NCBI RefSeq assembly: GCF_021869535.1
Contig: NW_026262604.1
Location: 43,090,001 to 43,154,000, forward strand
Direction of reading: 5' to 3'
Origin: Mytilus californianus
Lineage: Eukaryota
DNA length: 64,000 nt
The notes below the pieces were generated by a model. The model did no database searches, was not told the DNA's origin, and worked only from the letters and a program-made list of their open reading frames with translations. Numbering within the stretch: position 1 is the stretch's first letter; each line of letters opens with the position of its first letter. A program made the position numbers and the translations under genes. Positions 1,850-53,515 of the stretch are shown here, one piece after another.

Positions 1850-4018
1850 CTAAAGATGACATTTTTTTTTTCGATAAAGATTTGAAATAACTGCTTAATA
1901 TCAAAGTATACTAACATTTAATATACCTGTGCTAGTTCCCAACTCACATATAATCCGGCTGGCCACGTTACTACCGGAGACCTCAACATTGTCAATAACA
2001 CTTCCCTGGAAAATGTGTTATCCAAAGGTCCGAAATATCGTGAGCCTAAATCCATCAATTGGAAATACCACTTCAAAATACTGTTGGATTCGGTCTTGGA
2101 TTACGCCAGGCAACGGGCTAAACGCGAGAAAGAAGACGTAGATACTCTTTCCGAATGGATTTAGGCTGTGCGGTCGTTGATACTAATAAGAATTGAGAAA
2201 CTAAAAGGGTCTATCAATACCCATGCTACGTTAATCTTTAAAGACCCAAATGTTGCAAAACACTCGTCCTACCTCCATGACAAATACGTTGTTGACCCCG
2301 CCGATTAAGCCCCAAACAACATCGTTTTTGTGTGAAAATCTCATTACATAAACTGCTTGATAGATGAATTAGGTATTGATAATTCACTTGGAAACTCAAC
2401 ATATACCCTCACGAGACTTACCAAAGAGGAAATCCTGGATAATCATAGGTCTGTTCTATGTTCCTTTGGAATTTCAACCAAAGATGAAGAACTGGATCTT
2501 CCATCACTGTATTGGATACCTACACTACATAAGTGTCCCTACAAACAACGGTATATTGCTAGGTCTTCCAAGTGCTCCACGAAACCTTTTTCTATATTAT
2601 TAACATCTATTTTATCAGCAATCAAAGCCGGGTTTCAAAGTAATTGTGAAACTGCCTATTCTAGAGGTGGCGTGAATCAGATGTGGATACTAAAAAAATC
2701 CAAATATCTTTTAGAGTACATACAATCTTACACACTCTCATCTTGCAATAGTATTAAAACAATTGACTTTTCTACACTTTACACAAGTATTTCCCATTCC
2801 AAACTGAAAGACAAATTGAAAGAGTTGGTATTGCTTTGTTTCATAAAAAAAAATGGCGAACGTTGATACAAGTATCTTGTCTTTGGGAGGGATAAATCCT
2901 ACTTTGAAAAGAATCACTCTGATTAAAAAAAAATTCTCTGAAACTGACATTATCAAGATGCTTGATTTCTTGATTGACAACATAGTTGTTACGTTGGGAG
3001 GACATGTTTTTTCAACAGACTGTCGGCATTCCAATAGGAACCAATTGTGCCCCTCTTCTTGCTGACTTGTTTCTTTATTATTATAAGGCTGACTTCATAC
3101 AGGAACTTCTTAGGAAGAAAGATAAGAAGTTAGCAATATCCTTTAACTTTACTTTCCGCTATATAGATGATGTTCTCGCACTATATAATTTAATTAATAT
3201 TGAACGCATCTATCCAATCGAACTTGAGATAAAGGATACAACAGATAAGGTTGAGTCTGCCTCATATCTTGACTTACATCTAATAATTGACAAGGAGGAT
3301 CGGTTGAAAACAAACTTTACGACAAAAGAGATGATATCTGATTCCCAATTGTGAACTTTCCATTTCTATGTAGCAACATTCCAGCAGCGCCTGCATACGG
3401 AGTATATATCTGCCATTTGATACGATATTCCGGGATTGTATTTCTTATCATGATTTCCTTGTTAGGGGGTTGCTATTAAACCAAGAGTTCCAAATGATGA
3501 AGTTGAAATCATCCCTTCGTAAATTTTACGGACGCCATCACGAGTTGGTTGACCGTTATGGAATAACCGTTTCACAGATGATATCGAATATGTTCCTTAT
3601 GTCGTAATCAGGGTAATTACAATCCACTTCCTTTTTCACCACGAATGTGACCTACCGAATTAGACTATTTACCGGATTTGTAATAACACGAGCAACACGA
3701 CGGTTGCCACATGTGGAGCAGGATATGCTTACCCTTCCGGAGCACCTGAGATCGCCCCCAGTTTTTTGTGGGGTTCGTGTTGCTTAGTCTTTAGTTTTCT
3801 ATGTTGTGTCTTGTGTACTATTATTTGTCTGTTTGTCTTTTTATTTTTTAGCCATGGCGTTGTCAGTTATTTTCGATCTATGAGTTTGATTGTCCCTCTG
3901 GTATCTTTCGCCCCTCTTTTAATACTGAAACAATAAGACAAAAAACCCTCGATATAATCTAGAGAAACAGCTTTCATCCCATTAAAAGGAATAGTTTGCA
4001 AGATATCAATATCTGTAT

Positions 4019-7942: not shown

Positions 7943-10900
7943 CTCTTCAAAAAATAAAAAATACTTGAAATCGAAAATAAAGATTTCCGTTTATAATTAA
8001 AAATTATAGTTCTTAGAAAGGTCGCCGCACGTTCAAACTGTTTGATGCATATTAACTTTTCAAGAATGTTTTTTTGTTTATCCTTTAAAGACGTAACTCT
8101 GTTAAGCATATATTTTACTATACATATCGTGTCTTATGATATTTTTTTAAATAAGGGTTAAAAAGATGAGACAGCTACAAATGAGAGGATCAAACTCATA
8201 AGTTGAAAAGTGACTGGCAAATTCATGGCACAAAACTAAAAAAACGAGGAATAGACAAACAACAGTCTACAAACATACGTTGTGCTAAGGTTCCTTTTGT
8301 CAATCTCACATTCTTAATATTTTTCATAGTCTTCGATTTTTTTTACCCATTTGAAAGTTACTACAGATATGTTTTTTTTTTCAAATCATCTCCATTTGCA
8401 CCATCCATTAATACAGCTTGAACTAAAATCAACATTTAAAATTGCCTTAAGCATATTTGCAATATAACTTGATTTCATGTTGAATTATTATAAATATAAA
8501 TTTTAAAGAGTGAGTTTTTGAGAATTTTTTTCATAATTGTAGAATCCTTCAAGAAATATTCTCTTAACAACTACATATAGTCAAAAAACAAATTTAAATG
8601 AGCATACCTGCTCTGTTTATTTGTGAATGTTATGTTATTTATTAAAAATTAAAGGAGTTAAAATGTAAACGTTAGTGATACATGTATCCAACGAAACAAT
8701 AAGACTATTGAATGTTTGTGTTTTATGTTTACTTACCTCTTTTTTAATTTTCTTTTTGATTGATTTTACTAAATTGTAAAATTTCTAGATAAATAACTGA
8801 TTTACCTTGTTTACGTATCACAAGCGCCTCTTCGTGTTAAAGAAGACTTCCACGTAAAACAACGTTTGTCTATTCGTAGTAAAGTATTTTCCGGTTGGTG
8901 TACATGTACGGAAGAACGACACAGTATCATCCGGATAAAATGAAAACACAACAAAAATGCGTAGATATGTCATGAGCATTTTCAGGTCAAATTAAAAGAT
9001 ATTTTGAATAGGAGTTGATTAAGAATATTTTCATTATTTTTGCTTTCAATGCTTTGAGTTCAAATAAATTTGCAAATAATTGAACAATTATTTTATTCAC
9101 ATCGTCATTTATTCGTCCACGATTTTTTCCCATTTTCTCTTGATAGTCCACCTGATTCGTGCATATTTGTAGAAGAATTGTGGGTTTGATGATAAAAGCA
9201 TGGACCCACTCTGAAAAATCAAATATGACGGCCATTTTCAAGATGTCTGCCAATCAGTCTAAATGTCTAATTAAAAGCAAATAATATTTAAACCAAATCT
9301 TTTAAAAACATAAAAGGTAATCCAACGTTTCTAGTAAGTCATGACGTTATATTAGACTTTTAAATTTTTTTCAAAATGGCAGAAAATTTCAAAAAAGCCG
9401 CCAAGAAGTGAAAATAATAAAAAAAAAAAAAACTAAGACAATGCTTTGCTTATGTTCTATCGAATTGCATTTTGCAGTTCATACAATATTCTAGTGATTG
9501 TATTTCCATGATAAATTGATGCTGCTTGCATGATAATTTAAATCAAAGATCCTATAAATGGAAACATTCGAATGTTTTCAGGACGCCATCAGGATTTGTT
9601 TGACCCTCAGGTACCATGTAAGTCACAAATGGTAATTGATATGTTTTATTTCTCCTTGCCACAATCCTTTCTTTTTTTCTCGATTGTGGTAATATGAAGA
9701 TGACAAAATTTATACTTTAAAACGGTAATCATGGTAGCATCACGAGTGCTTCCAGTTGGCCAGAAACTTCACACCCTTTCTGAACACCTACGAATTCCCC
9801 TAGTTTTAATAAAAGGAGACTTGTATTATTTATGCTTTCAATGTTGTGTAATTTGTTCTTTATTTTTCAATGTCTGTGTTGTCAAACAATGAAAGTCTTG
9901 TTTATCCATCGTACAGTTATAGGAAACCTTATTTCATTTCAAACGTTCACGTTCGGTCAAGTTTTGTATAATTTACATGTACAATGGTTTTTACATGTTT
10001 TTAACTTTGTGATTCTAAGAGTTAGAAATGAGACATTTATAAATCCACTATTATCTGATATATGCCTAATTACTGGATATGACTCATTAATCTAATTAAG
10101 GAAAAGCACCTAGGCAGGTGTCACTTGTTGAACAGAAATCGCTGACCCTTCTTGAGCATCTGACATCATCCCCGGTTACAAGAATAATCGCCAAAAAAAT
10201 TTCAAACATTATAACAATGTTATCACATTATACAATATATTGAATTAGATGTTCATATGTATACACTGTATATGTGATAGTCTTTAATAATTTCATTTGC
10301 AATCCGCTTCACAACTTATATAAACATCTGTATATTGGTGATAAACTATGTTGTAAATGGTATTGACAATCAGCTTCACAAAGTGTATAACCTATGTATA
10401 TTGGTGACGATCTATGTTTTAAAATCTGTTTCAGTTACACAAATTGTATACACATCTGGATGTTGGTGACGATCTATTGGGTAATGAGTATTTGTAATAA
10501 GTTTCACAAATTGTATAAACATCTGTATACTAATGAAGTCCTGTTGTAAAAGGCGTTGGTTTGCTATCGTATTGATGGCTTGTACTCTGATAGGGAGGTT
10601 GTGTTGATTACAGATTTTTGATGTTTTATTTATTCGCAGCTTTTATAAACGTAAGGCAATTTAGTATAAGCACACTGTTAGAAAAATTATTTCTATTTAA
10701 AACGAATGTTTAACCAAATTTGACATGGAGTTGGTTGAATTAATTCGTTTGTAATTTCAGTGCGTTTGTTTTCTTCGTTTCATGGAATTTGATAGCCTTC
10801 TTGTGATATTCTTCTTCTTATTAACTTAAATAAGTAAACCACTAAAAAACAGTTAAACTCTGTGGTAATTCTTATGTTTGTACAGATGAGAATTTACGCT

Positions 10901-12169
10901 ACATAAATCCAGTGAAAACCTGATTAATTAAATATCTGTCTAGTTTTCTATATCGATATCAAGTGATGTACACGTACACAAAAGAGGAAAATTAGCAACC
11001 AGGTAAGGGTTACTATTATCAATGCATCTTATTTCTGGTAGGGAACAACTGAAACGTCAAATAGTATTCAGGTCTGAGACAATTCAAAATGTCCCTAGTT
11101 GATAATTGTATGCGAAAGATATACATGTACATTAGTAATCTAACTCACAATTGTTATACCAAGTCAGGAAAATGGCCATTGTTATATTATAGTTCGTTTC
11201 TGTGTGTGTTGCATTTTAGTGTTGAGTGTCTGTTGTGTCGTTATTCTCCTATTATATTTGATGTGTTTCCCTCAGTTTTAGTTTGTAACCGGATTTGTTT
11301 TTTTCGCAATCGATTTATGAATTTCGAATAGCGGTATACTACTGTTGCCTTTACATGCTTTATTTATACACATTTTATGCAGAAAAATTTACTTACGTAT
11401 ATATCATATTCGTAAATAAAGTGTATCATTGTGTAGTCTGATTGTTTTTATTTGGGCACTGACTATTCATCTATTGTGTGGACATTGTTAATAATGTCTG
11501 ATTTAAAGTTCATGGAAATAAATAATTTGTTTGAGGTGGGAAGTAAATACTAATAGAATATTTCTATCAAAATGATAGATCAACTCATAAATAAAAGAAT
11601 ATTATTTACAAATGTTCTTGTTCCAGTACATGTAGTATGTTGTTGACAAAAATATGTTGTTATTGTATGAAGTTTAAAAACAGATGTTTGACCCGAGAAA
11701 ATATGTTTGTCCTCCTCTTTCTTCCATAAAAAAAGTCTGCGCATTCAACACAAACTCCAAATCTTGCATGTAGTTGCTTGATTAACATTGTTTTATTTTG
11801 TTGATTCCTTTTGATACAATTATATTTATACAAATAGTTAAAGAAACATGACATACTTTTACCTAGTTACATAAAATCAATCATTTGAAATAAATTCTAA
11901 AATGTCGTTTATAAAATTATTTATACATTATACAAATTTTTTTGTTTTAAGCTCTGCATCTATATTTTTCATTAAATGAAAAAATGCGACAAAAGTATCA
12001 ATATGAAGTAACAAGTATTTGGGGTTAATGTCGTAAAAAACGCTGGCATACAACCACATGTATAATGAATAATATGTTTTTTGGCAGTTGTCTTTTCCAC
12101 CTTTTTCTCTCTTGTTCTACAAAAAGTTGAGCAATTAAGCAATAAAAAGAGATGAAATATATCAAAGGA

Positions 12170-12290
12170 AAAGTCAAACTCATCGTTGGAAAACGAACTG
12201 ACAAAACAATAAAACGACATAAAGACAAACAACTTTGTACACATCATAACATGTAAAACATAACTACTGACCAAAACAAACCCAACCAAA
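12170..12290 (-). mobile_element. Decayed 3' tail of the Penelope-like family
   Basis: Reverse complement resembles the GTCAGTT..TTTTCGA.CTATGAGTTTGA tail at 3780-3910. Confidence 0.5.
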
Positions 12291-12746
12291 AACCGCGAAA
12301 ACCAATTTACATCAGTTTCAATTGGACAAAGTTAACCTCGGAGGGGTCGTGTTTGTTTCCTTTTTAGGGTTTTGGGATTTCCAAATTTTTTTTAACGTGT
12401 TTAACTGATAAATAGTATTTCTTCAACATGTGGTGTATGAATGGTTATTATATAATATTATGTGAAAGGTTTTTATTTTCTTGTCTCAATAAGTCATTGA
12501 TTTCTATATACATTTTTTCGTTTTTTAACTTTCTCACTCGTTTTTTTTTTTCGTGTTCAATATTGAGATTTAGATATTGAGTCCTCCTTTAAAAATGCCT
12601 GCTTTACATGGTATGCCATTGTCAAGTATTTAAAATGTTAGAACTAAGGAAGAATTTATAATTGTAAGTCAAAATTTGTATTACAGAGGATGTAAACTGA
12701 TCAACGCCTAAATGTCATAGACATTTGAATCTGATACGTCAATACC

Positions 12747-13470
12747 ATGTCGGCGGACTATTTGGTTGTCGGATGTGGTCTTTCGGGTGCAGTAATGGCC
12801 AGATTCATGGCTGAAGAAAGAAATAAGAAAGTTCTGATTGTAGACAAAAGAGATCACATTGGCGGAAACTGCTATTATTACATCGATGAAAACGGAATAC
12901 GAATTAATAAATATGGCGTACATTTGTTTTATGCAAATAGCGAAAGAGTATGGAAACACGTAAACTGTTTTTCTAACTGTACAAGATGGGAACACAAAGT
13001 TTTAGGGGTAATTGATGGACATTACATACCCTTGCCCCCTAACATAAAAACTATTAATATGTTATGAGGACAACATTTAACAAATCAACATGAGGTAGAT
13101 GACTGGTTGTCCCGAAACCAATTGAAGCATGAACATATTGAAAATGGATATCAGATGGCCACGTCAAGGGTAGGCGTTACCCTGTATGAAGAAATATTTA
13201 AGCATTATACATACAAACAATGGGGAAGGTACCCAGAGGAATTAGATGCATCAGTTTTAGCTAGAATACCAGTAAGAAATAATTTGGATGACTGTTACTT
13301 CAGTGACAAATAACAAGCACTTTGTACTGATGGTTATAACAGTACGCCTGTCACGTGATTGTTTTGACATTGATCCTTCAACTGTATCCAACAGTACAAT
13401 TATATATTCTGGACCTATTGATGATTTCTTCACAGATATTGGATATCCCAAATTAGAATATCGATCCGTC
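12747..13470 (+). pseudogene. glf: UDP-galactopyranose mutase (prokaryote-type), intronless, disrupted and 3'-truncated
   Basis: VVGCGLSG FAD motif, DKRDHIGGNC, YGVHLF, PLPPNIKTIN, YTYKQWG, LARIPVR, YFSDK, IIYSGPID and KLEYRS occur in UGM order. TGA at 13065-67, TAA at 13311-13, a deletion/frameshift near 13337, and homology is lost after RSV. Confidence 0.92.
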
Positions 13471-16182
13471 TGTATGTGAATGCTATAAATTTGTGTGAGA
13501 TAAGATCTTTTCTGAAACAGGATCTTTAAGACAATTCACTATAAACAATCATTGTGTATTTTGCGGTAATTATAGAGATTGATGCTTTAAAGCTACCGGT
13601 ATGGATAATCAAAATAAAAAAAAAGTACAGTTTGTTAATGTCGAAGATACTTAAAGCGATAAAAATTGTATTTAGAATTAGAATGTTTGCAAAAAGTAGT
13701 AGCACTAGACATTTTGTGTCTATCAATTGGTTTAATCGTTGAAACTTGTAAATCGAATACTGACATCTCTAGAATGGCAGTGTTGCACCCGTTGTAAGTA
13801 AATCTAACAATTTGATACAAGTACATATGCTATTCTTCAAATGCATGAACAGTTTTGCATTTAGTATCAGTCGTATAGTGACACAGTGACAGACATCTTT
13901 ACAAAGTTCCAACAATAAAGTAACAAAATCGGCAAACTTTTCTTTTCATATCCTTGCTAAAATTTCTGGATTTTTTGTCTCTCCTAACTTGATACCTCAT
14001 TGCTTATATAATACGATGTCATATGCGAGAGTTCATTAAATGTTTCCTGATGTAAACTGGATGTAACAAATGGTTAAAACCAAGCTTCACAATCATTTTT
14101 ACAATTATAGCTTTAAAATGTATTAATAACTGCACATGCACTAAGTAATCAAACAATCGCATTTATAAAAATTGACAAATTTTGACTAAGAATTGTTGAT
14201 AACCTCTATGAAAGAGATGTCTTAGAATTTTAAACATGTATTTACCGCAAACCGCGATTATTTACACAAAAAACAAAACGACTTTTATAATGACAGTCCA
14301 TAGTGAAATATCATTTATTTGACGATATCTTTTATTTTTTTGAATGCTAGCAAAGATTTGTTAAAATAGCAACAGACAAAATAATTACAGGATTTATCTA
14401 CAGAAAAATTGACAAACAGTCGAATTTCTCTAATAAGATTATACTGATGTTTCGAATAAAAAGTCGAACATTATGACTGTCAACGGAGACAAACTGATCA
14501 AACCAGATCATGAGTACAATCAAGGGGCCTAAACCAGTATGAAAGTTCCCTTAGGCTAGTAAAATAATTAAACATATTTCGAAGTTTATCGTCAAGAAGA
14601 TGTGGTATGAATGCCAATGCGACAACTATCAACCATATCCAACTGTGAACAACGTTCGGTCAGAGTACAGTTTACCATATTAAACTTTGTACCGAAAAGG
14701 GATAAGATCGTCAACATTTGAAAAAGCTCGAGTACAAAAAGCAAAAGTGTGAGTTTAATTTTTGCCGGAGGCAAAAATATACAAAACAAATACAATGTTA
14801 CAATACCTGTTGTTTCATTATAAAAATCAGAAAAAATCGCGTTTTTAAGGTAAATATAAGGGTAAAAAGGTATCTTTATTAAATATAACATAATACTTAA
14901 ATATATACAATGTGTCGAAACAATTGATTTTCCGTAGAAGATGTGGCGCTACCAGGCCTATTTGCTGTTGATTTGAGCTTTAAAAAATGCAACTATAAAT
15001 ATTTCAAATGTTCCTTTTGGAGATCATCGGAAAATTTGTTTAGCGTTACAACAAGCACTGAACACTGAGCAAGAATTGTTTCATTGTGAAATCTAATTTC
15101 TTTGAAATTGTATAATTATTGTATTTTTATGCATTCATCTTCTAATCCTGTTTTCTTTTCTACTCCTGGATTCACAAAATGTCAACAAGGGCTTCATTTT
15201 GTTTTGTCTTTAGTGCACAGTGATTTTCTTTCACGAAGTAAGAAACCACTGTCTTGATTTTCCGTTACTTTTGCTATAAAGTATGTATTCGAATATATGA
15301 TGTCATTAAGTATGTTTTGATAGCGGATCTCAAGGACATGTGACAGGTATGTTAATGAGACAGCAAAAAGAGGACAGGAAAACGAAAAAAGCAACTAGTG
15401 AGCAGCTTATGGCCGTCAACAAGAGGCATGTCTATTTTGATAACAAATTATGGAATAAACTGAATAAGACATCTTTTACTACAGTTACTGTAATATCAGG
15501 TCATGCCAAAAAGTCTATAAATTATGTGTCTGTTTTTAACCTTATGGTACGTTACAACCTGTAATGCTTAATATCGATCAGGTTTTTTGTGTCGTGTTCT
15601 CGATATGGAAAAGCTTTGTTTTTTGAAGGATTGAGACATGTAAGAATACGCGATTCGAAAAATCCCACTGCGTATAGTATCATGTTAGTTATTTCCTGAA
15701 AATTTAAACTAGTTTTAAAGAGCTCGAAAGAGTTTTACAGGAAAAGTTTTACGACTGATGATATCTATTTTGATGCAACAATAGAAATTTCAACAAGTAA
15801 TTTGTAAATGATGTGTTTATTGATGATGGGTGCAAAAATCTGTATTAAACTGAACCTTAAACATGACAAAAACTATGAATAAATGTCATAATCGGAAAGG
15901 ACCTTGGTTTTCAATGGTCTTAGTCGATTAATGAGATTTGAGCATACCTGACAACTGTAAACTTAAATCTAAGATCAGGTAATAGAGTGGAACGCTCTAA
16001 GGATCACTGTTATGCATATTGAATGTCCTTTTGGTATATTCGCATCTGTTTTAAAGCAGTCCCGAACATTTGTGAAAGAAACGTGTCAAGATAAATGTAT
16101 CCTAAACATATTACAATCTGTTTTTTTATGTTTAAAATGTGAATATCAAAATATCTATCTCGTTTTATCAAGAATATACGTA

Positions 16183-16873
16183 GGACTCTGAACCGCGATG
16201 GTCACGCTGATGTGCGATGGTTTGACGCTGACGTGCAATTGATTACATAAATCATATTTTTTTAATGTTTTTCATGTTTACATTTCAATGTAGAATTCAA
16301 TTGATTGTTAGAAGTAGCTTTTCGTTTTTTTTATGTAAAACATTGAGAGTTTAACCGTTTAATTTAAAACAGTCATTGTATTTCCAGTCCCCACTGAATG
16401 TAACTTTGTTGTGTACATTATACTTTGTAAATAGCTTAGACAAAACAAAAAGCAGCCGTTCATTTAATCGATCAGAAATTGACGCTTCTATTTTTTTAAA
16501 CGCAGTACTAATTGCAATGATAACAAAAAAGATGGGTTAGTTGTTAGTTGAAATGCAAATACGTCATAGTTAGTCAGAACGAAACAAATTAAGCGAAAAA
16601 TGTATACTGCTGTTATTAATAAAAACAAGGAATAAGATAGATCACCGATGTCTTTTAGTGCAACTGAAGAAAATGTTTAATGTTTGGTATTTATATACAA
16701 ACTTATAAAAAATCAAGCTCTCATGATAAATGAACATCTCTAAATTGTAAACTAGCCATCACACGTCTTATAGACCATCGAACATGAGCGAAAGGACCAT
16801 TGCACTTCGGCGTAGACGATCGCACTTCAGCGTGACCATCGCACTTCAGCGTCCCCATCGCACCTCTGAGTCA
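16183..16873. mobile_element. MITE-like TIR element with subterminal 19-bp repeats and probable TA TSD
   Basis: Left GACTCTGAACCGCGATGGTCACGCTGATGTGCGATGG; right end reverse-complements to GACTCAGAGGTGCGATGGGGACGCTGAAGTGCGATGGTCACGCTGAAG. TA flanks at 16181-82 and 16874-75. Confidence 0.7.
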
Positions 16874-16910
16874 TACATATATACACAACATTTGTACTGA
16901 AATCGATCAG

Positions 16911-17143: not shown

Positions 17144-20100
17144 CTGAAAAATAAACAAGAATATTAATATTACTAAATGATATTTTTTATGGCATGTTAG
17201 ATTAGTATTTGTTAAGATTAGATAAGATTAGAAAACGAATGTAAATCATAATTTTAACAATGTATTTAAACAAAATCTGCAATAACATTGGTTCAGATTA
17301 TTGATTTATATTGTTTTATTTCAGACAGGTAATTTGATATCTTGGTAACCTACGTTGTAAGGCGTTTTAAAAAAAGCGACCCTAAAATACAAATTAATGA
17401 ACAGTTGTTTGCTGTGCAAGCATATCGGGCACGCTTAGTTGTTTAAAAACAGTATATTACACTCTAATGATCATACATGTACCATCTGTGTTCAGGGTAT
17501 CATTCGCTTTCATTCACTAACCTATCGTGTATGTTGGCAATTATATTAAGACAATGCCCTCCTTGAAGTATATTAAAGAGCTTTCCGCGTCAGATCTTAT
17601 GCATCTAGAACTAAAAGACATTGAAAAAAATGTACAATTTGCCATAAAATGTGGGGAGCTATGAGATCAAGTATAATTTTTAATAACAGATGACACATTA
17701 TAGATGAACAGTATCCTGTTGTGAGTAAATTCATTTTAAGTCGGAATTTTGGCTTTCGCATTGTTCGTGAAAGGTTAATTCGTTCGATTCCTTTCTTAAG
17801 GTCCTTTTTTAAATGCTACTTGTCAATATAGAAAAAAAAAACTGATCAACCATATAAGGCTTAAAATTTGGTACGCCACGAGCGCTTTTTATCTCCAAAA
17901 AAAATCCTCAGTCAGGCTCGAATAAATTAAAGTTATCCAAACAGGTTTGACAAATATATTCAACATTATTACATACCATATGTTCTTCTGTTTATAATTA
18001 GTCGTAGGTTTATGAAGTTGTTGTTTTGACAGTTCAGTGAAATGCAATTCAATTTTCTTTGTTCTATTAAATTTGATATCAGATTAAGCATCTACTTCTC
18101 ATATGTTCAATGGTTTTTCGGATATTTTAATGTCAAATAAAATAAATGTTTTATGTTGAATTACTCGAAATACTGTTTGTCTACCACTAGTCATATATTG
18201 CCTTAGTCGTATTTGGTACAATTGTCGGAATTTGCGTTTTAAATGCTCTTCAACTTTGTTTGTGATGTGGCCTTCCAGTTTTTTTTTCGAGTGCCACTGA
18301 TGAGTTTCATGGAGAGTAGTACTTTTGATAAGCTTTTTCGTCATCATTTCGTTATCATGTAACTGAACTTTGGTGAAGGGTAGATTTTTGTGCTATTTTA
18401 CATGGTACGTTACCCACAAAAAAGTGTTTTGCAATTAGAAAGTGTATGCATTAAATCCTATAACAAAGATATATGAAAATAATATGCCTAAATACACTGC
18501 AATTTCTTACCAATTCAATACCGTTACCTTATTTGTTTTTTTTTACCAAGAACATATAATTCTTAATTTAATCTGTCATCTGGACACTTTACCTTCATAC
18601 GGTATTTTGCAATGTCCGAACACTTCCATTAAAAGTATTCCAAAAGACCAGACATCAGATTTGGTAGTCGCCTTTTCCCCTTCAATTATCTCTTGCGCTA
18701 ACCATCGAACCGGTGGAATAGTGCCTACATATAGTTAAATAACATGATATTTAAATGACAGCAACTAACCGTGTACTACTTTTAATCTTTGATCTTTGAC
18801 TACAATGGATTCAATAATATTGCGTTAAATTCAAGTTGGAATCAAAATTAATGGCTGCTTAATGTATCAGCCAACATATCGATTAATTGATTGGTTTTTA
18901 ACGCAAGTTTTAGCACTATTGGCTATAAGATGTCGGTAATTTTTTATTGAAGAAGGAAGCTGGGGTGCCCGGAGAAAATCACCAACATTTGGCAGGCAAA
19001 CTGATAATCCTTGTAAATTTGTATGGAGTCCAGGGATAATTTAATAGACATACGCAACTCATTGATATCCTGAAATGATAGTTCTATTGGTAATAGTAAA
19101 AGATCAATGATAAGTTGATATTGAAATTACAAGACCTCCAATCATGTCTTATTAACATATTAACAGCTTGTGTATAAATATAGGAAGATGTGGTATGAGT
19201 GCCAATGAGACAACTCTCCATCCATGTTACAATTTATAAAAGTAAACCATTATAGGTGCATGTATGATCAGATATATTTTTGATACTTACAATATTATAC
19301 CTATCATTTGATTTAATTAAAGCGTCACTTGTCACTTGTAAGTCTTTTGTAGACACGATGCGCATCTAGGGTGCAACATTATTATGAGCCTGGTATCTTT
19401 GATGAATTTTGATCATACTGGACGTGCCATGTATGCAGTAAACGGTCGTCAACTAGTGACTAAGCGGACATACAAATTAAACGCGTTCAATCGGATACAC
19501 ATTCGCAGTTCAATTTTAAACGTTATCATTCTGAATGCGGTAATTGGAGAAATCACACGCAATATGGGCAACCGGTGAATAAGTAGCTTTAGTTTATGTT
19601 ATGTTTTGTCAGCACCAAACTGTACCATGATTTTTATCGTCTTTATTGATATCAGAGATCTTATTATCAGTCAAAATGGTATAGCTATACAAAATTATGT
19701 AAACTAAAGACGTTTAGCATCAACAATAAGACGGTCTATGTTGTGACCTTTGCAATTTTATATTCAAGCTCGTGTAGATGTTACTTACGCCTTCGTTTGT
19801 GATCTATTGTATGGTCATTTGTCATATGCGCAAACTTGAACCCACAGACTTTTGGGTTCCAATTTGATCCAAATAATATATTGGCTGCTCTCAAATCGGA
19901 ATGAATGATCTCTCTGGTTCCTAGAAAATCCATTCCTTTTGCAATCTAAAATAAACCGTATAAAATGTAAAACGCATGGTTTGTTTTCTATATTGTTAGA
20001 ATTCTCTTTGGCCGTGAACGAATTCATGAATGCGGTAAAAGATGTTAAATCAACATAAAAAAGGTAGGTTTGTTTACATTAACCCCGAAAACTGTTATAT

Positions 20101-39460: not shown

Positions 39461-42400
39461 GATTCAAGATTCAAGATTCAAGATTCAAAGTTTTATTTAG
39501 AGTCGATATTCCATAAACTACATAAACACAAGATCTAGTGAGCTTTTCAAATCGACTTAATAACAAAATACAATACACACATACAAAAGTCATGAAAACA
39601 ATACAATTTTAAACATATAATGCATAGTAAGATACCATAAATGACATATATAAATTAAAAGCATAGTACACTTAAAACATAGCACAAGTTAATAATAAGA
39701 TTGCACAAATCAAATAGTCAAAATAAGATAGACACAGGTATAACACTATATGCATGCACTGCACTGGCATGAGCTGTTACTTGGATCCCATGTTTGTACC
39801 AATTTTTTGAATTGGTCAAAAGATGTTTCCATTCGACAATGGTTCGGCAGCTCATTCCAGATTTGTGCAGCATTATGGCGAAACGATTTTAAGCCATACT
39901 TAGTATTTCAGACTCTTTGGAGTACTGCTGTTTCCTGTGATCTTAAATCATACTTGTTAATTTGTATATCAATCAAATCATGAAGGTAGCTCGGATTTTT
40001 TTTGTGAATTATTTTAAATGTTTCTATTGCGATTGTTTTTATTCTTCTTATTTTTAAAGATGGTAATTTAGATTTTTCTAGCAGTTTTTTGTATGGACTA
40101 TCATAATCTTCATAAATGAATCTAGGAGCTCTTTCTTGAATTTTTTCCATTTTAAAAGAATTTTTTTCGCTACAGTAGTGCCAAATTACTGGACAATAGT
40201 TAAAATTCGAAAGAATGAATGAGTAGTATACTGTTAACCTACCTAGCCTGTTTAAATATTTACGCATACGTTTTAGAATATTTAATTGTCTTGATGCCTT
40301 TTTACATATTTCACATATATGATTGTTAAAGTTTAAGTCCGAATCTATAGTTATTCCAAGAAGTTTAACATTTTCTTCACAATCAATTTTGTTTCCATTT
40401 AAATTAAATATCAAATTATGTTTATTTGTTTTTTTTCCAATGGCTAAAGCCTGGAATTTGTCAGGATTAGCCTTCATTAAATTTATAGAAAACCAGATTA
40501 TTAGATTTAAACTATCAGTTTCTAAACTTTCAACAACTCTATCTAAATCCTGATCACTATATGATACAGTGTTATCATCAGCATTAATATAAATGGTGCT
40601 GTTTTGTACAAAATGAAATATGTCATTTATGAAGACATTGAAAAGAACTGGACCAAGAATTGACCCTTGTGGTACACCTTTAAACATACGATCCCATTCA
40701 ATGTAAGAACTTCCAATTTTAATGCGTTGTTTTCTGTTTTCTAAATAACTTTTTAATAATTTTAGAGAATTTTTAGATAGACTGTATGCTTCCAATTTAA
40801 GTAAAAGTAAATCGTGCGGTAAACAATCAAATGCTTTACATAGATCCATCAAAATTGCAGCAATAAATTTGTTTTGGTCCAGAGCTTTTTCCAGTCTTCT
40901 ATTATTTTAATAAGTGCAGTTTCGCAACCAAAACCTGATCTAAATGCCGAAATAAGAGGATGGAAATGTTTATTTAAGAATTCCTGGAAGTTCTTACAGT
41001 GAATGGGATCGTATGTTTAAAGGTGTACCACAAGGGTCAATTCTTGGTCCAGTTCTTTTCAATGTCTTCATAAATGACAGATTTCATTTTGTACAAAACA
41101 GCACCATTTAAAATTATGCTGATGATAACACTGTATCATATAGTGATCATGTATAGCTCTTTCATAAATTTTGGAAATACATGGTAACACACTTATAGGT
41201 CTATAGTTTTCTTTATCAAGAGAGTAATTCTTTTTAAAAAGTGGGGATACCTGAGCAGCTTTAAGATTATCTGGAAAAATTGAGCTTTCAATTGATTTAT
41301 TAACTAAAATTTTAATGGGATTTGATATTACTGGCTGAAATAATGTCATATCCAGTAGCTTTACTTAATTTAACCTATTTATTTGTTTACTCACAAACTC
41401 TTCTGTTACAGGTTTAAAATTCAACTCATTATAATCAGTTTTAATTTCTTCAATTTTGATTATACTTGGGTGATTTCTGTCTATTTTTATGTTTTTATCT
41501 CCTATATCTTTAGCTACATTTATGAAAAATTTATTGAAAATTTCTGATACCTCTTTAGGATCACTGAGAATTTTATCATTTTCATATAAAATTATGTTAT
41601 TGTTTGATTTAATGCTTTTACTTGATAACAATGGTTTAATAGTGGAATAAAATGTTGTTGATTTTGGACCACCAGCAGTTCTTTCATAAAAATATGTTTT
41701 TATTGAGCTCTTTTTTTATTTTTGTCACAATATTTCTCTGTCTTCTGTACAACTCCCAGTTGGCATCACTTTTGTTTTTAAGAAATCTGTTATGGTACAT
41801 TCTTTTTTTTGTAAATTGCACTTCTTAGATCTTTATTCATAAAGGGTGCAGGTGATACTATTGATCTTCTTTTTTTCATTCGTATATGCTTGTCAATTAT
41901 GTTAACAAATTCAGATTGAAAATTTGAATACGCTTCATTGACATCATCAACTGACAGCAAATTATCAAAATTTACACAATTTAGTTCATGTACAAATTTT
42001 TCCTGATCAAAACTTTTAAAACTTCTGTAATTTATAAATACCTTTTTAATTTTAGGTACAAAACCTTTAAATGAAACGAAATTATGTTGTGATAATCACT
42101 GAGCCCACAATTAAAATTAGATATATTTTGACAAAAATTTGGTTTGTTTGTCAGGATAACATCAAGTAAAGTTGGTAATGCATTTTTTGTAAAACATGTA
42201 GCTTTTTTAACTATGTTTGTAAAATCAAAAACATCACACATATTTTTTAGAGGTATACACTTTTCTTCATCTAAACAATTGTAATTTAGATCACCAATAA
42301 TAATAACATTGTCATATTTATCAGATATTTTATCAAATGTTTTATTAAAGTCTTCAATAAATAAATTATCATTGAGGGATGGGGGTCTGTAAAGACCACA

Positions 42401-43391
42401 TATCAGCCACTTTCTGTCTTTAAGGTTTATTTCAGTAAAAAATGATTCAATTGTTTTACATTCAAGTTTGGTCTTCCTGTCACATGCTAAATCTGAGCGG
42501 ATGTAAACAAGGAGGCCTCCGCCTTTCGCTGTCCGATCTGCTCTCCAAAGGTGGTAACTGTCAATAAAGAATTCACCGTTTTTAAAGGTTTCATCGAGTT
42601 TGGTTTCTGCCACGATTATCATGTCAACTAGATTGTCATTTAACAAATCTTTTATTGAAGAGAATTTATTTCTAAAACTGTTGATGTTAAGATATGCTCA
42701 GTGAAAGTTATTGGGGTGTTTGATTCGTACACCTTTCAGCTCGTCAAATATGTTTTGCTCAACGTTCTCAATGTTGACATCGGAAATGTTGTTTACATTA
42801 ATCGACCCACATTCTGAACTTATAGATGTGTAACATGATGTTGATACTTTGAAGTACGAGTCTAGAAAATTTGGTAGTCGGTTTGTATAACCTTCACAGA
42901 AATAAAAGTCATCGCTTTTTGATAGTATGTTGTACTCCTGTACAGATAAATTTGTACATTTTAAATGAGTCCATAAGTCACAGAAATCGCATTGTATCGT
43001 TTTCTGATTACATTTTACCGGCTTATTACAATCGGTACATGGATGTTTAATTGGACTTGGATTATGATGAATATCACCGCTAAGTAAAATTGATAAAATA
43101 AGAAAATACTGAGATGGATTTTGTACTTTTCGTTGTATCGTAGTAGTTGTTGTTGGTCGGCCATATTGAGAAGTCGAGTTCACTCGGACTGTTGGGAAAA
43201 GTTTTTCGATGGCAAAATTGTATTTACCTAAATTTGTTATGTTTGAACACGAATAATAGCCAAGATTTTCTGGCAGTTCATGTTTAAAACCAATTTTGTA
43301 ATCACTAGTTGGTGTTAGACGTATAAATATTCCAAATAATACAAGAGCCAATGTCAGTCCATCTTGACCGGCCGCCATCTTTTTCAGTTTA
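39461..43391 (-). mobile_element. Near full-length CR1/L2-group LINE (single ORF: PHD-APE-RT), decayed
   Basis: PHD finger, YLNINS/AETKLD/GDLN endonuclease, RPISVLP, MDLCKAFD and GVPQGSILGP RT motifs, (TTGAATC)n tail. TSD ACCTGAGGACAGGTCT(G) at 39445 and 43392. Confidence 0.93.
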
Positions 43392-47084: not shown

Positions 47085-47360
47085 TATTACCGGGTGTGTA
47101 CTAACATCAGCAACACGACAGGTGCCACATGTGAAGCAGTATCTGCTTACCCTTCCGGAACACTTGAAATCACCCCCAGTTTTTGTTGCGGTTCGTGCTG
47201 CTCAGTCTTTAGTTTTCTATGTTGTGTTTTGTGTACTATTGTTTGTCTGTTTTTTTTCCTGTTTAAGCTTTAGTTTTCTGTGTTGTGTTTCGTGTACTAT
47301 TGTTTGTCTGTTTGTCGTTTGAGCCATGGCGTTGTCAGTTTATTTTCCACTTATGACTTT
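47085..47360 (+). mobile_element. 3'-tail-only copy of the first Penelope-like family
   Basis: ATTACCGGG...CAACACGACAGGTGCCACATGTG...GCTTACCCTTCCGGA...AGCCATGGCGTTGTCAGTTTATTTT matches 3665-3880. Confidence 0.85.
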
Positions 47361-52624: not shown

Positions 52625-53515
52625 TGAACTGTGCCCTTCTTCTTGCCGATTTGTTCCGTTATTCATATAAGGCTGACTTCATACAAGAACTTCTTAGGAA
52701 GAAAGAAAAGAAGTTAGCAGTATCCTATAACTTTACTTTCCGCTCATAGATGATGTTCCCTCACTAAATTATTCAAACGTTGGTGACTATGTTGAACTCA
52801 TTTATCCCATTGAACTTCAGATAAAGGATATAACAGATACAGTTAAGTCTGCCTCATACCGTGACTAACATCTAGAAATTGACAATGAGGTTCGGTTGAA
52901 AACAAAACTTTACGACTAAAGAGATGATTTCAGCTTTCCAAATCTGAACTTTCGATATTTATGTAGCAACATTCCAGCAGCGCCCGTATACGGAGTATAT
53001 ATCTCTCAGTTGATACGATACTCCAGGGCTTGTATTTCCTATCATGATTTCCTTGATAGAGGGTTGCTGCTCACAAGGAAGCTATTAAACCAAGAATTCC
53101 AAGTGTTGAAGTTGAAATCATCCCTACTTAAATTTTACGGACGCTATCACGAGGCGGTTGACTGTTACAGAATATCCGTATCACAGATGGTAGCGGAGAT
53201 GTTCCTAACGTTGTTACTACAATCCCGTTCCGCCTTTCCGAATGTGACCTTCCGAATTAGACTTATAACCGGGTTTGTACTACCATGAGCAACACGACGG
53301 GTGCTACATGTGGAGCAGGATCTGCTTACTCTCCCGGAGCACCAGAGATCACCCTCAGTTTTTGGTGGGGTTCGTGTTGCTCTGTCTTTTGTTTTCTATG
53401 CTGTGTTTTGTGTAATATTGTTTGTCTGTTGGTCTTATTCTTTTTAAGCCAAGTCGTCAATTTTTTTTTCGACGAGTTTGAATGTCCCTTTGGTATCTTT
53501 CGCCTCTCTTTTACG
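52625..53515 (+). mobile_element. 3' part of the first Penelope-like subfamily (RT C-terminus + tail)
   Basis: Collinear with 3045-3917 (CAPLLADLF, MIRYSRACISY, tail CGCCTCTCTTTT). Confidence 0.88.

What the first reader, a model, noticed from the sequence alone, without database searches (positions are those of the whole stretch)
12747..13470. Prokaryote-type UDP-galactopyranose mutase (glf) pseudogene in an animal chromosome: candidate horizontal gene transfer
Seen: an intronless frame with the ordered UGM motifs (GxGxxG, HIGGNC, YGxHxF, YTxKQWG, RIPVR, YxGPID, LEYRS), embedded among spliced animal genes and host repeats. It has two nonsense codons, a deletion and a 3' truncation, so contamination is unlikely. 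Established: UGM makes UDP-galactofuranose, a sugar typical of bacteria, fungi, trypanosomatids and nematodes and absent from mammals. The YGxHxF form is the bacterial type, not the fungal/nematode GGH type. Inference: the lineage acquired glf from a bacterium or giant virus, and an intact paralogue may let this mollusc make Galf glycans.
Basis: partly seen in the sequence, partly recalled or inferred. Interest (0 to 1): 0.85.

Follow-up and report, generated by a model that had tools for sequence, protein, structure and literature searches.

The report
Dead copy of mussel glf gene
This is a broken, untranscribed, half-length spare copy of a bacterial-type sugar-mutase gene (glf/UGM) that Mytilus mussels carry in several intact copies; the gene family is already in public databases and its foreign origin has already been hinted at, so the copy itself is ordinary.

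Summary
Window 12747-13470 (+) is a bacterial-type UDP-galactopyranose mutase fragment covering profile positions 3-258 of 373. It has two in-frame stops (TGA 13065-67, TAA 13311-13) and a 38-nt frameshifting deletion near 13335-13340. All homology ends at 13469, and no C-terminal third exists anywhere in the window.

The HGT reading needs re-framing. The fragment is not a relic of its own transfer. It is 88% identical in protein to annotated, intact, intronless 369-aa glf genes of Mytilus galloprovincialis, M. edulis and M. coruscus, and it nests inside that clade (100/99). It also shares about 2.4 kb of upstream non-coding DNA with their tandem repeat unit, so it is a 3'-truncated DNA-level duplicate that decayed.

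Contigs from two separate DNA studies bridge its break points. One RNA run gave no reads over it.

The intact family is under purifying selection (omega 0.06-0.18). Its nearest relatives outside the mussel-type clade are protist, giant-virus and bacterial sequences. A foreign origin of the family is therefore plausible, but the donor is unresolved. A 2026 paper already lists Mytilus among the six metazoans with this domain.

Verdict: real, explained, low novelty. No earlier finding of this scan mentions glf.

The parts
10295..10529 (+). 67-bp minisatellite (3.6 copies). It is the leftmost element collinear with the region upstream of intact glf units, so it marks the probable left edge of the duplicated block.
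   Evidence: Tandem Repeats Finder. blastn matches it to L087 3471-3835 and L001 17468-17546, collinear with the blocks that follow.
10737..12746 (+). Upstream non-coding DNA homologous to, and collinear with, the intergenic DNA 5' of intact Mytilus glf genes. Identity is 70-83% in blocks at 10737-10904, 10936-11085, 11417-11632, 11628-11931, 12203-12363 and 12392-12746.
   Evidence: blastn of the window against L001 (M. galloprovincialis), L086 and L087 (M. edulis) and L089.
11157..11353 (.). High-copy interspersed repeat inserted in the upstream block. It is absent at the matching place of L001 copy 2. A further fragment of what the read joints suggest is the same repeat lies at about 14594-14627.
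   Evidence: Read depth is 1e5-1e6 against about 42 for the flanks, and other genomic copies join 11353 to about 14596. The window has 360 bp where L001 has 133 bp between collinear blocks. Sequence was read.
12747..13064 (+). Pseudogene piece 1: ATG plus the FAD-binding Rossmann part (GxGxxG, HIGGNC, YGVHLF), equivalent to residues 1-106 of the 369-aa parent.
   Evidence: Pfam PF13450 E 7.8e-16. TIGR00031 positions 3-104, E 3.6e-33. 88% identity to P0171.
13065..13067 (+). In-frame stop 1: TGA where intact copies have TGT (Cys107).
   Evidence: DNA alignment A2 and translation.
13068..13310 (+). Pseudogene piece 2, carrying the YTYKQWG and ARIPVR motifs, equivalent to residues 108-188.
   Evidence: Pfam GLF E 1.4e-11. 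Custom HMM positions 112-192, E 1.3e-26.
13311..13313 (+). In-frame stop 2: TAA where intact copies have TAT (Tyr).
   Evidence: DNA alignment A2.
13335..13340 (+). Site of a 38-nt deletion (12 codons plus 2 nt, so it shifts the frame). Its exact position is ambiguous within a TATA[C/A]A direct repeat that flanks the lost segment in intact copies.
   Evidence: DNA alignment A2. tblastn changes frame between 13337 and 13336. An independent DNA contig (X3, 13145-13878) shows a single 1-nt gap and no 38-nt insertion.
13339..13470 (+). Pseudogene piece 3 in the +1 frame, carrying the YSGPID and LEYRS motifs, equivalent to residues 211-255.
   Evidence: Pfam GLF E 1.5e-6. Custom HMM positions 212-258, E 2e-10.
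13469..13470 (.). 3' break point. Homology to every intact copy stops after 13469, which is nt 761 of the 1110-nt gene. What follows is single-copy DNA unrelated to glf.
   Evidence: blastn end points are identical against L001, L086, L087, L088 and L089. Contigs X1 13368-14389 and X3 13145-13878 bridge the break. Downstream DNA has no match in the glf loci or elsewhere in the window.

Best explanation
The locus is a non-functional, 3'-truncated paralogue of the Mytilus glf family, which encodes a bacterial-type UDP-galactopyranose mutase. A block of about 3.2 kb was copied at the DNA level from a glf repeat unit to this place. The block held about 2.4 kb of upstream intergenic DNA and the first 761 nt of the 1110-nt intronless gene. 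Either the copy ended inside the gene, or the 3' part was later deleted.

Without the C-terminal third of the enzyme the copy could not make an active protein. From my memory of the Deinococcus radiodurans UGM structure, that third carries the Asn296, Arg305, Tyr335 and Tyr370 equivalents. The copy then drifted. It gained two nonsense codons, a microhomology-flanked 38-nt frameshifting deletion, 11 replacements at otherwise invariant residues, and a repeat insertion in its upstream region. It is not transcribed in the one RNA run examined.

What is shown: family membership, the lesions, the shared upstream DNA, physical reality in two DNA data sets, and relaxed constraint. What is inferred: the order of events (truncation at birth or later), and that the parent family reached the mussel lineage by horizontal transfer from a microbial eukaryote, giant virus or bacterium.
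For: Family membership:
- The fragment is 87.6% identical in protein to M. galloprovincialis VDI30855.1 over 242 residues, against no more than 69% to anything outside Mytilus.
- In the careful ML tree the pseudogene sits inside the Mytilus clade with support 100/99.

DNA-level duplication:
- DNA homology with M. galloprovincialis and M. edulis loci runs collinearly from about 10295/10737 to 13469. That includes about 2.4 kb upstream of the ATG, and it always ends at the same base.
- The parent genes are single 1110-nt ORFs in tandem. L001 holds two copies 10.6 kb apart. M. edulis copies lie at 40.57 and 40.82 Mb of one chromosome.

Lesions and decay:
- The lesions are defined.
- Eleven private changes fall at 142 sites invariant in all intact relatives, against 0-2 in intact copies.
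- The pseudogene branch has omega of about 0.3-0.5, against 0.06-0.18 for intact lineages.

Physical reality and expression:
- Contigs from two DNA studies bridge the 5' end, the deletion and the 3' break. The RNA run X21 has zero reads over 11668-14506.
- No C-terminal remnant exists in the 64 kb.
Against: - An omega of 0.3-0.5 on the pseudogene branch is below 1. Either the copy was constrained for a while, which would be odd for a copy truncated at birth, or the three-point estimate from 240 codons is noisy.
- RNA absence rests on one run of which only about 6% was read. The 'RNA?' contig run X9 has a low-depth contig at 12585-12880, which may be DNA carry-over or a paralogue.
- I could not show where in the genome the window lies relative to the glf array.
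- I could not show whether an orthologous dead copy exists in the other Mytilus species.
- Many differences in the second DNA run (X3) were not listed, so identity of the two stop codons in that individual is likely but not proven.
Confidence: 0.9

Rival explanations
1. The fragment is the direct relic of its own, separate horizontal transfer: a bacterial or giant-virus glf landed here and decayed.
For: The gene is intronless and of bacterial type. Giant-virus MAGs and Bacteroidota carry UGMs 52-59% identical to the mussel protein.
Against: It is 88% identical to the resident Mytilus genes but only about 55% identical to any sampled microbe or virus. It nests inside the Mytilus clade. It shares about 2.4 kb of upstream, non-coding, mussel-specific DNA with the intact tandem units.
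Confidence: 0.02
2. It is a processed pseudogene: a retrocopy of a glf mRNA, 5'-complete and 3'-truncated.
For: LINE elements with reverse transcriptase are present in the window. The copy has no introns.
Against: The parent genes have no introns either, so that feature says nothing. Collinear homology extends about 2.4 kb upstream of the ATG across intergenic DNA that includes a minisatellite, which is far more than a plausible 5' UTR. LINE-mediated copies are normally truncated at the 5' end and carry a 3' poly(A). This copy is the reverse: 3'-truncated, with no A-run at 13470.
Confidence: 0.04
3. It is an assembly artefact or microbial contamination joined to mussel DNA.
For: None was found. 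This was the default worry for a bacterial-type gene in an animal assembly.
Against: GC content (0.33) matches the flanks. Contigs from two different studies of the same organism span 11866-12760, 12828-13137, 13145-13878 and 13368-14389 at single-copy depth. Homologous loci exist in chromosome-scale assemblies of three Mytilus species.
Confidence: 0.01
4. The glf family is an ancient, vertically inherited metazoan gene lost almost everywhere, so no HGT took place and this is simply a dead paralogue.
For: The mussel-type clade has depth. Two further lineages at 74% and 69% identity (P0175, P0217) join Mytilus with 100/100 support. One of them lies on a 751-kb eukaryote-like contig that shares repeats with the Mytilus window. 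The backbone of the tree is unresolved.
Against: No other named metazoan is among the 120 closest proteins out of 5.8 billion. InterPro lists the domain in only six metazoan species (PMC13390645). The genes lack introns. The mussel clade nests within a group of algal, chlorarachniophyte and giant-virus sequences with 96/91 support.
Confidence: 0.07

Closest known systems
Mytilus glf / 'UDP-galactopyranose mutase-like' genes (M. galloprovincialis VDI30855.1 and XP_076086956.1; M. edulis XP_071145150-164; M. coruscus CAC5356532.1)
   Same: Protein identity is 87-89% and coding DNA identity about 91%. The start codon is the same, and the upstream non-coding DNA is shared. The fragment sits in the same clade in the tree.
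   Different: The window copy has only the first 255 of 369 codons, two stops, a 38-nt frameshifting deletion and 11 private changes at invariant sites. It also lacks a repeat of about 300 bp that sits upstream of the intact units sampled (L001 8690-8990 and its equivalents in L086 and L087). No public gene model has exactly its 106-aa first ORF.
Bacterial UDP-galactopyranose mutase (Glf; TIGR00031, PF03275; solved structures 3HDQ Deinococcus radiodurans, 1I8T E. coli, 3INR Klebsiella, 1V0J M. tuberculosis)
   Same: The domain order and motifs match. The intact mussel protein aligns end to end with 3HDQ (E 4.8e-99) and keeps the positions I recall as active-site residues in that enzyme: W184, R198, Y209, N296, R305 and Y335 equivalents (residue roles are from memory).
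   Different: The window copy totals about 173 bits against a TIGR00031 cut-off of 303.75, has no C-terminal substrate-binding third, and is interrupted. It resides in an animal chromosome.
Ciona UGM genes proposed as horizontally transferred (KY21.Chr5.483, KY21.Chr14.742; PMC13390645)
   Same: Both are bacterial-type, single-exon UGM genes in an animal with a patchy metazoan distribution. The same paper lists Mytilus as another holder.
   Different: The Ciona genes are expressed and intact. No Ciona protein appears among the 120 closest relatives of the Mytilus protein, which suggests a separate acquisition. I did not place Ciona in my tree.
Eukaryotic-type UGM (fungi, trypanosomatids, nematode glf-1)
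   Same: The reaction is the same (established knowledge).
   Different: That is a longer family with extra inserts. The window fragment and its parents instead match the bacterial-type equivalog model and solved bacterial enzymes.

Membership tests
Bacterial-type UDP-galactopyranose mutase (TIGR00031 / PF13450+PF03275) | N-terminal FAD-binding Rossmann motif GxGxxG | tested here: met
   PF13450 E 7.8e-16 on residues 7-72 of piece 1.
Bacterial-type UDP-galactopyranose mutase (TIGR00031 / PF13450+PF03275) | Complete GLF domain and a whole-protein score above the curated cut-off (303.75 bits) | tested here: not met
   The pieces score 115, 43.2 and 15 bits and cover model positions 3-262 of 378. 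Only GLF profile positions 2-40 and 61-106 of 203 are present. It is a fragment of a member, not a functional member.
Bacterial-type UDP-galactopyranose mutase (TIGR00031 / PF13450+PF03275) | Uninterrupted reading frame | tested here: not met
   TGA at 13065, TAA at 13311 and a 38-nt frameshifting deletion.
Bacterial-type UDP-galactopyranose mutase (TIGR00031 / PF13450+PF03275) | C-terminal substrate-binding region (FTR, PYYPV and YKYFNMDQ motifs) | tested here: not met
   No hit beyond HMM position 258 anywhere in the 64 kb; the next best E-value is 0.69.
Bacterial-type UDP-galactopyranose mutase (TIGR00031 / PF13450+PF03275) | Mutase activity (UDP-Galp to UDP-Galf) | not testable with these tools
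   This needs an enzyme assay. It is relevant only for the intact paralogues.
Mytilus glf paralogue family | Nested in the Mytilus clade with high identity | tested here: met
   87-89% identity. Clade support is 100/99.
Mytilus glf paralogue family | Shares the non-coding flank of the repeat unit | tested here: met
   Collinear blocks back to about 10295 against L001, L086, L087 and L089.
Processed pseudogene (retrocopy) | Homology confined to the transcript, 3' poly(A), target-site duplication | tested here: not met
   Homology extends about 2.4 kb upstream across intergenic DNA. The 3' end is truncated and has no A-run.
Horizontally acquired gene family in an animal | Physically integrated in host DNA | tested here: met
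   Contigs of two DNA studies bridge into host flanks. Intact copies lie on 74-75 Mb chromosomes among retroelements.
Horizontally acquired gene family in an animal | Patchy distribution in animals and nesting among non-animal sequences | tested here: met
   There are no other named metazoans in the top 120. The clade nests in a protist and giant-virus group with 96/91 support. InterPro count is taken from PMC13390645.
Horizontally acquired gene family in an animal | Identifiable donor lineage | tested here: inconclusive
   The sister group is a polytomy. An AU test of mussels held together with the sampled Bacteroidota gives p = 0.052, and the group was named after the tree was seen.

The most novel reading that the evidence does not exclude
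The interesting object is the intact family rather than the dead copy. A bacterial-type glf entered the mytilid lineage from a microbial eukaryote or giant virus before the genus Mytilus diversified. It expanded into a tandem array of at least eight gene models per genome and stays under purifying selection. That implies mussels make UDP-galactofuranose and Galf-containing glycans, a sugar not documented in molluscs in the literature I could search. The window copy would then be a fossil from the early phase of that expansion.
Probability: 0.4. Interest if true: 0.55.

Novelty: new member of a known kind. Interest (0 to 1): 0.22.

Why it matters
The locus adds little by itself. It is one more decayed duplicate in a mussel genome known for gene copy-number turnover.

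Its value is as a pointer and a control. It shows that the glf family has resided in the mussel genome long enough to shed dead copies carrying host repeats, which rules out contamination for the whole family.

The family behind it deserves a proper study. It consists of intronless, selected, tandemly amplified bacterial-type UGM genes in an animal. If the enzymes are active, mussels would make galactofuranose, a sugar absent from vertebrates and usually treated as a microbial signature and drug or diagnostic target. That bears on mussel glycobiology, immunity and allergen or antigen profiles, and on how often animals acquire sugar-nucleotide enzymes from microbes. Ciona is a parallel case.

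Tried and rejected
- **Missing 3' part.** I searched the whole window for it with tblastn of 12 full-length relatives and with a custom HMM on all six frames. The only hint was a weak match at about 18982-19200 (-), E 0.5-1.2, which is not significant and lies in a neighbouring gene. I rejected it.
- **Splice site at 13470.** I considered that the 'truncation' might be an exon end, because a GTATGT follows. I rejected this because all intact parents are single-exon and no downstream exon exists.
- **Exact look-up of the 106-aa first ORF** in public gene calls returned nothing on record.
- **Organism behind the nearest non-Mytilus relatives.** A full-text search for the run and assembly accessions found nothing. 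Pfam on the flanking ORFs of L078 gave nothing informative. Only shared repeats with the window, at 72-83% identity, point to a bivalve-like host.
- **Literature on Galf in mussels or on Mytilus glf itself.** I found no dedicated paper.
- **Synteny.** I looked for synteny between the window and the flanks of the M. edulis and M. galloprovincialis glf loci. Only repeats and the glf unit match, so the window's position relative to the array is unknown.
- **Donor test.** The AU test was borderline (p = 0.052), so I make no donor claim.
- **Earlier findings of this scan.** No note mentions glf, UGM or galactofuranose.

Full report
**1. What is in the sequence**

Translating window 12747-13520 (+) in one frame gives a clear UGM N-terminus (MSADYLVVGCGLSG...HIGGNCY...YGVHLF...). 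It is interrupted by a stop after residue 106 and a second stop after ...YFSDK. It then becomes unreadable until a +1 frame resumes with ...ITVRLS...YSGPIDDFF...LEYRSV.

Three independent profile searches agree on what it is:
- Pfam finds NAD_binding_8 (E 7.8e-16) in the first piece and GLF/PF03275 in the second and third (E 1.4e-11, 1.5e-6).
- NCBIfam TIGR00031, the bacterial UDP-galactopyranose mutase equivalog, matches model positions 3-104, 130-189 and 237-262 of 378.
- A profile I built from 59 full-length UGM domains, run on every stop-to-stop fragment of all six frames of the 64-kb window, hits only these three pieces (E 3e-47, 1e-26, 2e-10; positions 3-258 of 373). The next match is at E 0.69.

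The last ~115 residues of the enzyme are absent, both at this locus and anywhere else in the window.

**2. Whose gene it is**

An exhaustive phmmer search of the 106-aa first piece returned thousands of UGMs at no more than 60% identity. Many of the best were long fusion proteins with eukaryotic glycosyltransferase-like domains (GT90, GT61, DUF3431). I then searched the 5.8-billion-protein set with an alignment that combined the window pieces with full-length scaffolds. This recovered P0171, 'UDP-galactopyranose mutase [Mytilus galloprovincialis]' VDI30855.1, 369 aa.

tblastn of all retrieved proteins against the window puts P0171 far ahead: 87.6% identity over 242 residues. The next two are P0175 at 69% and P0217 at 67%, and everything else is at or below 59%.

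The 90%-identity cluster of P0171 has 17 members:
- M. galloprovincialis: VDI30855.1, VDI23438.1, XP_076086956.1 and others.
- M. edulis: eight of the listed models between XP_071145150 and XP_071145164, all on one 75-Mb chromosome.
- M. coruscus: CAC5356532.1.

The encoding loci show single, uninterrupted 1110-nt ORFs:
- In M. galloprovincialis contig UYJE01004726 two copies lie 10.6 kb apart.
- In M. edulis chromosome OY782968.1 copies lie at 40.57 and 40.82 Mb.
- Further copies were fetched from M. coruscus and from M. galloprovincialis chromosome OZ263157.1.

**3. How this copy arose**

blastn of the window against those loci shows that homology is not confined to the coding part. Window 12392-13469 aligns with L001 9654-10761, which includes about 355 bp upstream of the ATG. 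Further collinear blocks reach back through 12203-12363, 11628-11931, 11417-11632, 10936-11085 and 10737-10904. They end at a 67-bp minisatellite at 10295-10529, which is also present upstream of glf in L087 and L001.

Against all five intact loci the homology stops at exactly the same base, 13469, which is nt 761 of the gene. Downstream DNA (13470-16900) is single-copy by read depth and matches nothing in the glf loci.

This pattern is that of a DNA-level segmental duplicate of part of the repeat unit, either cut inside the gene or later deleted. It does not fit a retrocopy. The parents are intronless, so the lack of introns is uninformative. The shared 2.4 kb of intergenic DNA, the 3' rather than 5' truncation and the absence of a poly(A) run all argue against retroposition. 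It also does not fit a separate transfer.

Two further details:
- The window copy lacks a repeat of about 300 bp that sits between the matching upstream blocks of the intact units sampled (L001 8690-8990 and its equivalents in L086 and L087).
- It carries its own high-copy repeat insertion at 11157-11353.

**4. The lesions**

A nucleotide alignment with the intact L001 copy shows:
- TGT>TGA at 13065-13067.
- TAT>TAA at 13311-13313.
- A 38-nt deletion at about 13335-13340. In the parent the lost segment is flanked by TATA[C/A]A, which is consistent with slippage or microhomology-mediated repair, and the deletion shifts the frame.
- Loss of homology after 13469.

At 142 sites that are invariant in seven intact Mytilus proteins plus the 74%- and 69%-identical outgroups, the window copy has 11 private replacements: D44Y, H62Y, T63A, Y71H, W78C, T101K, K149E, F180L, R183C, P193C and C216R. 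Intact copies have 0-2 each.

Pairwise Nei-Gojobori estimates for intact copies give omega 0.06-0.18. Against the two outgroups dS is saturated and dN is only 0.17-0.23. A three-point decomposition gives the pseudogene branch dN of about 0.04 and dS of 0.08-0.125, so omega is about 0.3-0.5. That is three to six times higher than the intact branches. Constraint is relaxed. The value below 1 may reflect noise from 240 codons or a period of function before decay.

**5. Is it physically real and is it expressed?**

Twenty public runs from eight studies hold at least part of the 5-kb stretch around the locus. DNA runs of three studies of the same coded organism hold 37-90% of its sampled words.

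Laying two DNA runs from different studies gave single-copy depth: about 42 for X1 (probably the assembly's own sample) and about 6 for X3. The following contigs bridge the features:
- The 5' end: X3 11866-12760.
- The first stop: X1 12870-13137 and X3 12828-13137.
- The second stop, the deletion and the 3' break: X3 13145-13878, with only a 1-nt indel.
- The 3' break alone: X1 13368-14389.

The locus is therefore not a chimera, and the deletion and truncation are shared by another individual.

A 2026 RNA-seq run of the same species gave no reads between 11668 and 14506; its reads fell only on the two high-copy repeats. About 6% of that run was read, so this is negative evidence of limited weight.

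**6. Origin of the family**

Scans with the Mytilus protein found UGMs of 47-56% identity in many Bacteroidota genomes, mostly Flavobacterium. They also found UGMs of 48-59% identity in giant-virus MAGs.

The closest named proteins are from chlorarachniophytes (Lotharella, Amorphochlora; about 60%) and MMETSP protists. No other named animal is among the 120 best hits.

A careful ML tree (75 rows, LG+C20+F+G4, ultrafast bootstrap / SH-aLRT) gives these results:
- The window copy falls inside the Mytilus clade (100/99), near its base.
- Mytilus + P0217 + P0175 form one clade (100/100) on a stem of 0.36.
- That clade falls in a 59-row group (96/91) with Cyanidium, chlorarachniophytes, the GT-fusion proteins and the giant-virus MAGs. 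This group is separate from the sampled Bacteroidota/Parachlamydiaceae clade (100/97).
- Within the group the sister of the mussel clade is unresolved.

An AU test of a tree that forces mussels together with that bacterial clade gives p = 0.052. The grouping was chosen after I had seen the tree, so I do not name a donor.

P0175 is encoded by an intronless ORF on a 751-kb contig of an ENA metagenome assembly. That contig has sparse short ORFs, 35.6% GC and repeats that match the window at 72-83% identity, so it looks like a bivalve-like eukaryote (inference). P0217 comes from 1.3-1.6-kb contigs with flanking UTR-like sequence in five runs, which suggests, without proving it, that the gene is transcribed in that unidentified organism. 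If both are mytilids, the acquisition predates the genus Mytilus.

**7. Comparison with what is known**

The intact mussel protein aligns end to end with solved bacterial UGMs: 3HDQ at E 4.8e-99, and also 1I8T, 3INR and 1V0J. In that alignment it retains the positions I remember as active-site residues of the Deinococcus enzyme: W184, R198, Y209, N296, R305 and Y335. The Y370 equivalent is Tyr in most copies but Cys in P0171. The residue roles are from memory and were not tested here. The window copy keeps the first three positions and lacks the region that holds the rest.

In the literature, PMC13390645 (Genome Biol Evol 2026) proposes HGT for two single-exon UGM genes of Ciona. It states that the IPR004379 domain occurs in only six metazoan species: two Ciona, three Mytilus and the ostracod Notodromas monacha. 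I found no paper on Mytilus glf itself or on galactofuranose in mussels.

**8. Verdict**

However, this locus is a secondary dead duplicate, not a transfer relic. The family is already annotated and its odd distribution has already been remarked on. The donor is unresolved.

The copy is a new, unannotated member of a known kind, and its interest is low. The open question that remains is whether mussels really make Galf with the intact, selected, amplified family.

Noticed in passing
window 1927-3948, 47087-47360, 52630-53514: Copies of an interspersed repeat that also sits immediately beside intact glf genes in M. edulis and M. galloprovincialis. For example, window 1927-3447 matches L086 13174-11644 at 87.6%, and window 3627-3948 matches DNA about 550-850 bp upstream of glf in L001, L086 and L087. 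The element family seems to accompany the glf tandem units.
   Followed up: partly
window 11157-11353 and 14594-14627: Two fragments of one very high-copy repeat (read depth 1e5-1e6). In other genomic copies position 11353 is joined directly to about 14596, so the two fragments are adjacent in the repeat's consensus yet lie 3.2 kb apart here, on either side of the pseudogene. I did not work out whether this is coincidence or a rearrangement that involved the repeat.
   Followed up: partly
window 39908-43378 (-) and 56605-57781 (+): Decayed non-LTR retrotransposon ORFs: an endonuclease/exonuclease/phosphatase domain, a reverse transcriptase and a PHD-finger ORF. These confirm the animal genomic context.
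   Followed up: partly
L001, L086, L087 and the P0171 cluster: Besides the 369-aa genes, Mytilus genomes hold several shortened or internally deleted glf gene models of 170, 189, 235, 237, 306, 345 and 354 aa. L087's model does not translate to its listed product. The family seems to shed damaged copies regularly, and some annotated 'genes' may be pseudogenes.
   Followed up: no
proteins P0002, P0006, P0007, P0018, P0036 (metagenomic): Many of the closest non-mussel UGMs are fused at the C-terminus to eukaryote-type glycosyltransferase-like domains (GT90, GT61, DUF3431, DUF3405). A mutase-transferase fusion would channel UDP-Galf straight into a glycan. These proteins appear to belong to unidentified protists or algae.
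   Followed up: partly
L078 (ENA ERZ21930238 ctg26216l, 751 kb): A eukaryote-like contig in a 'metagenome' assembly carries an intact intronless glf that is 74% identical to the Mytilus protein. It also carries repeats shared with the Mytilus window. It probably represents host DNA of another bivalve, but the organism was not identified.
   Followed up: partly
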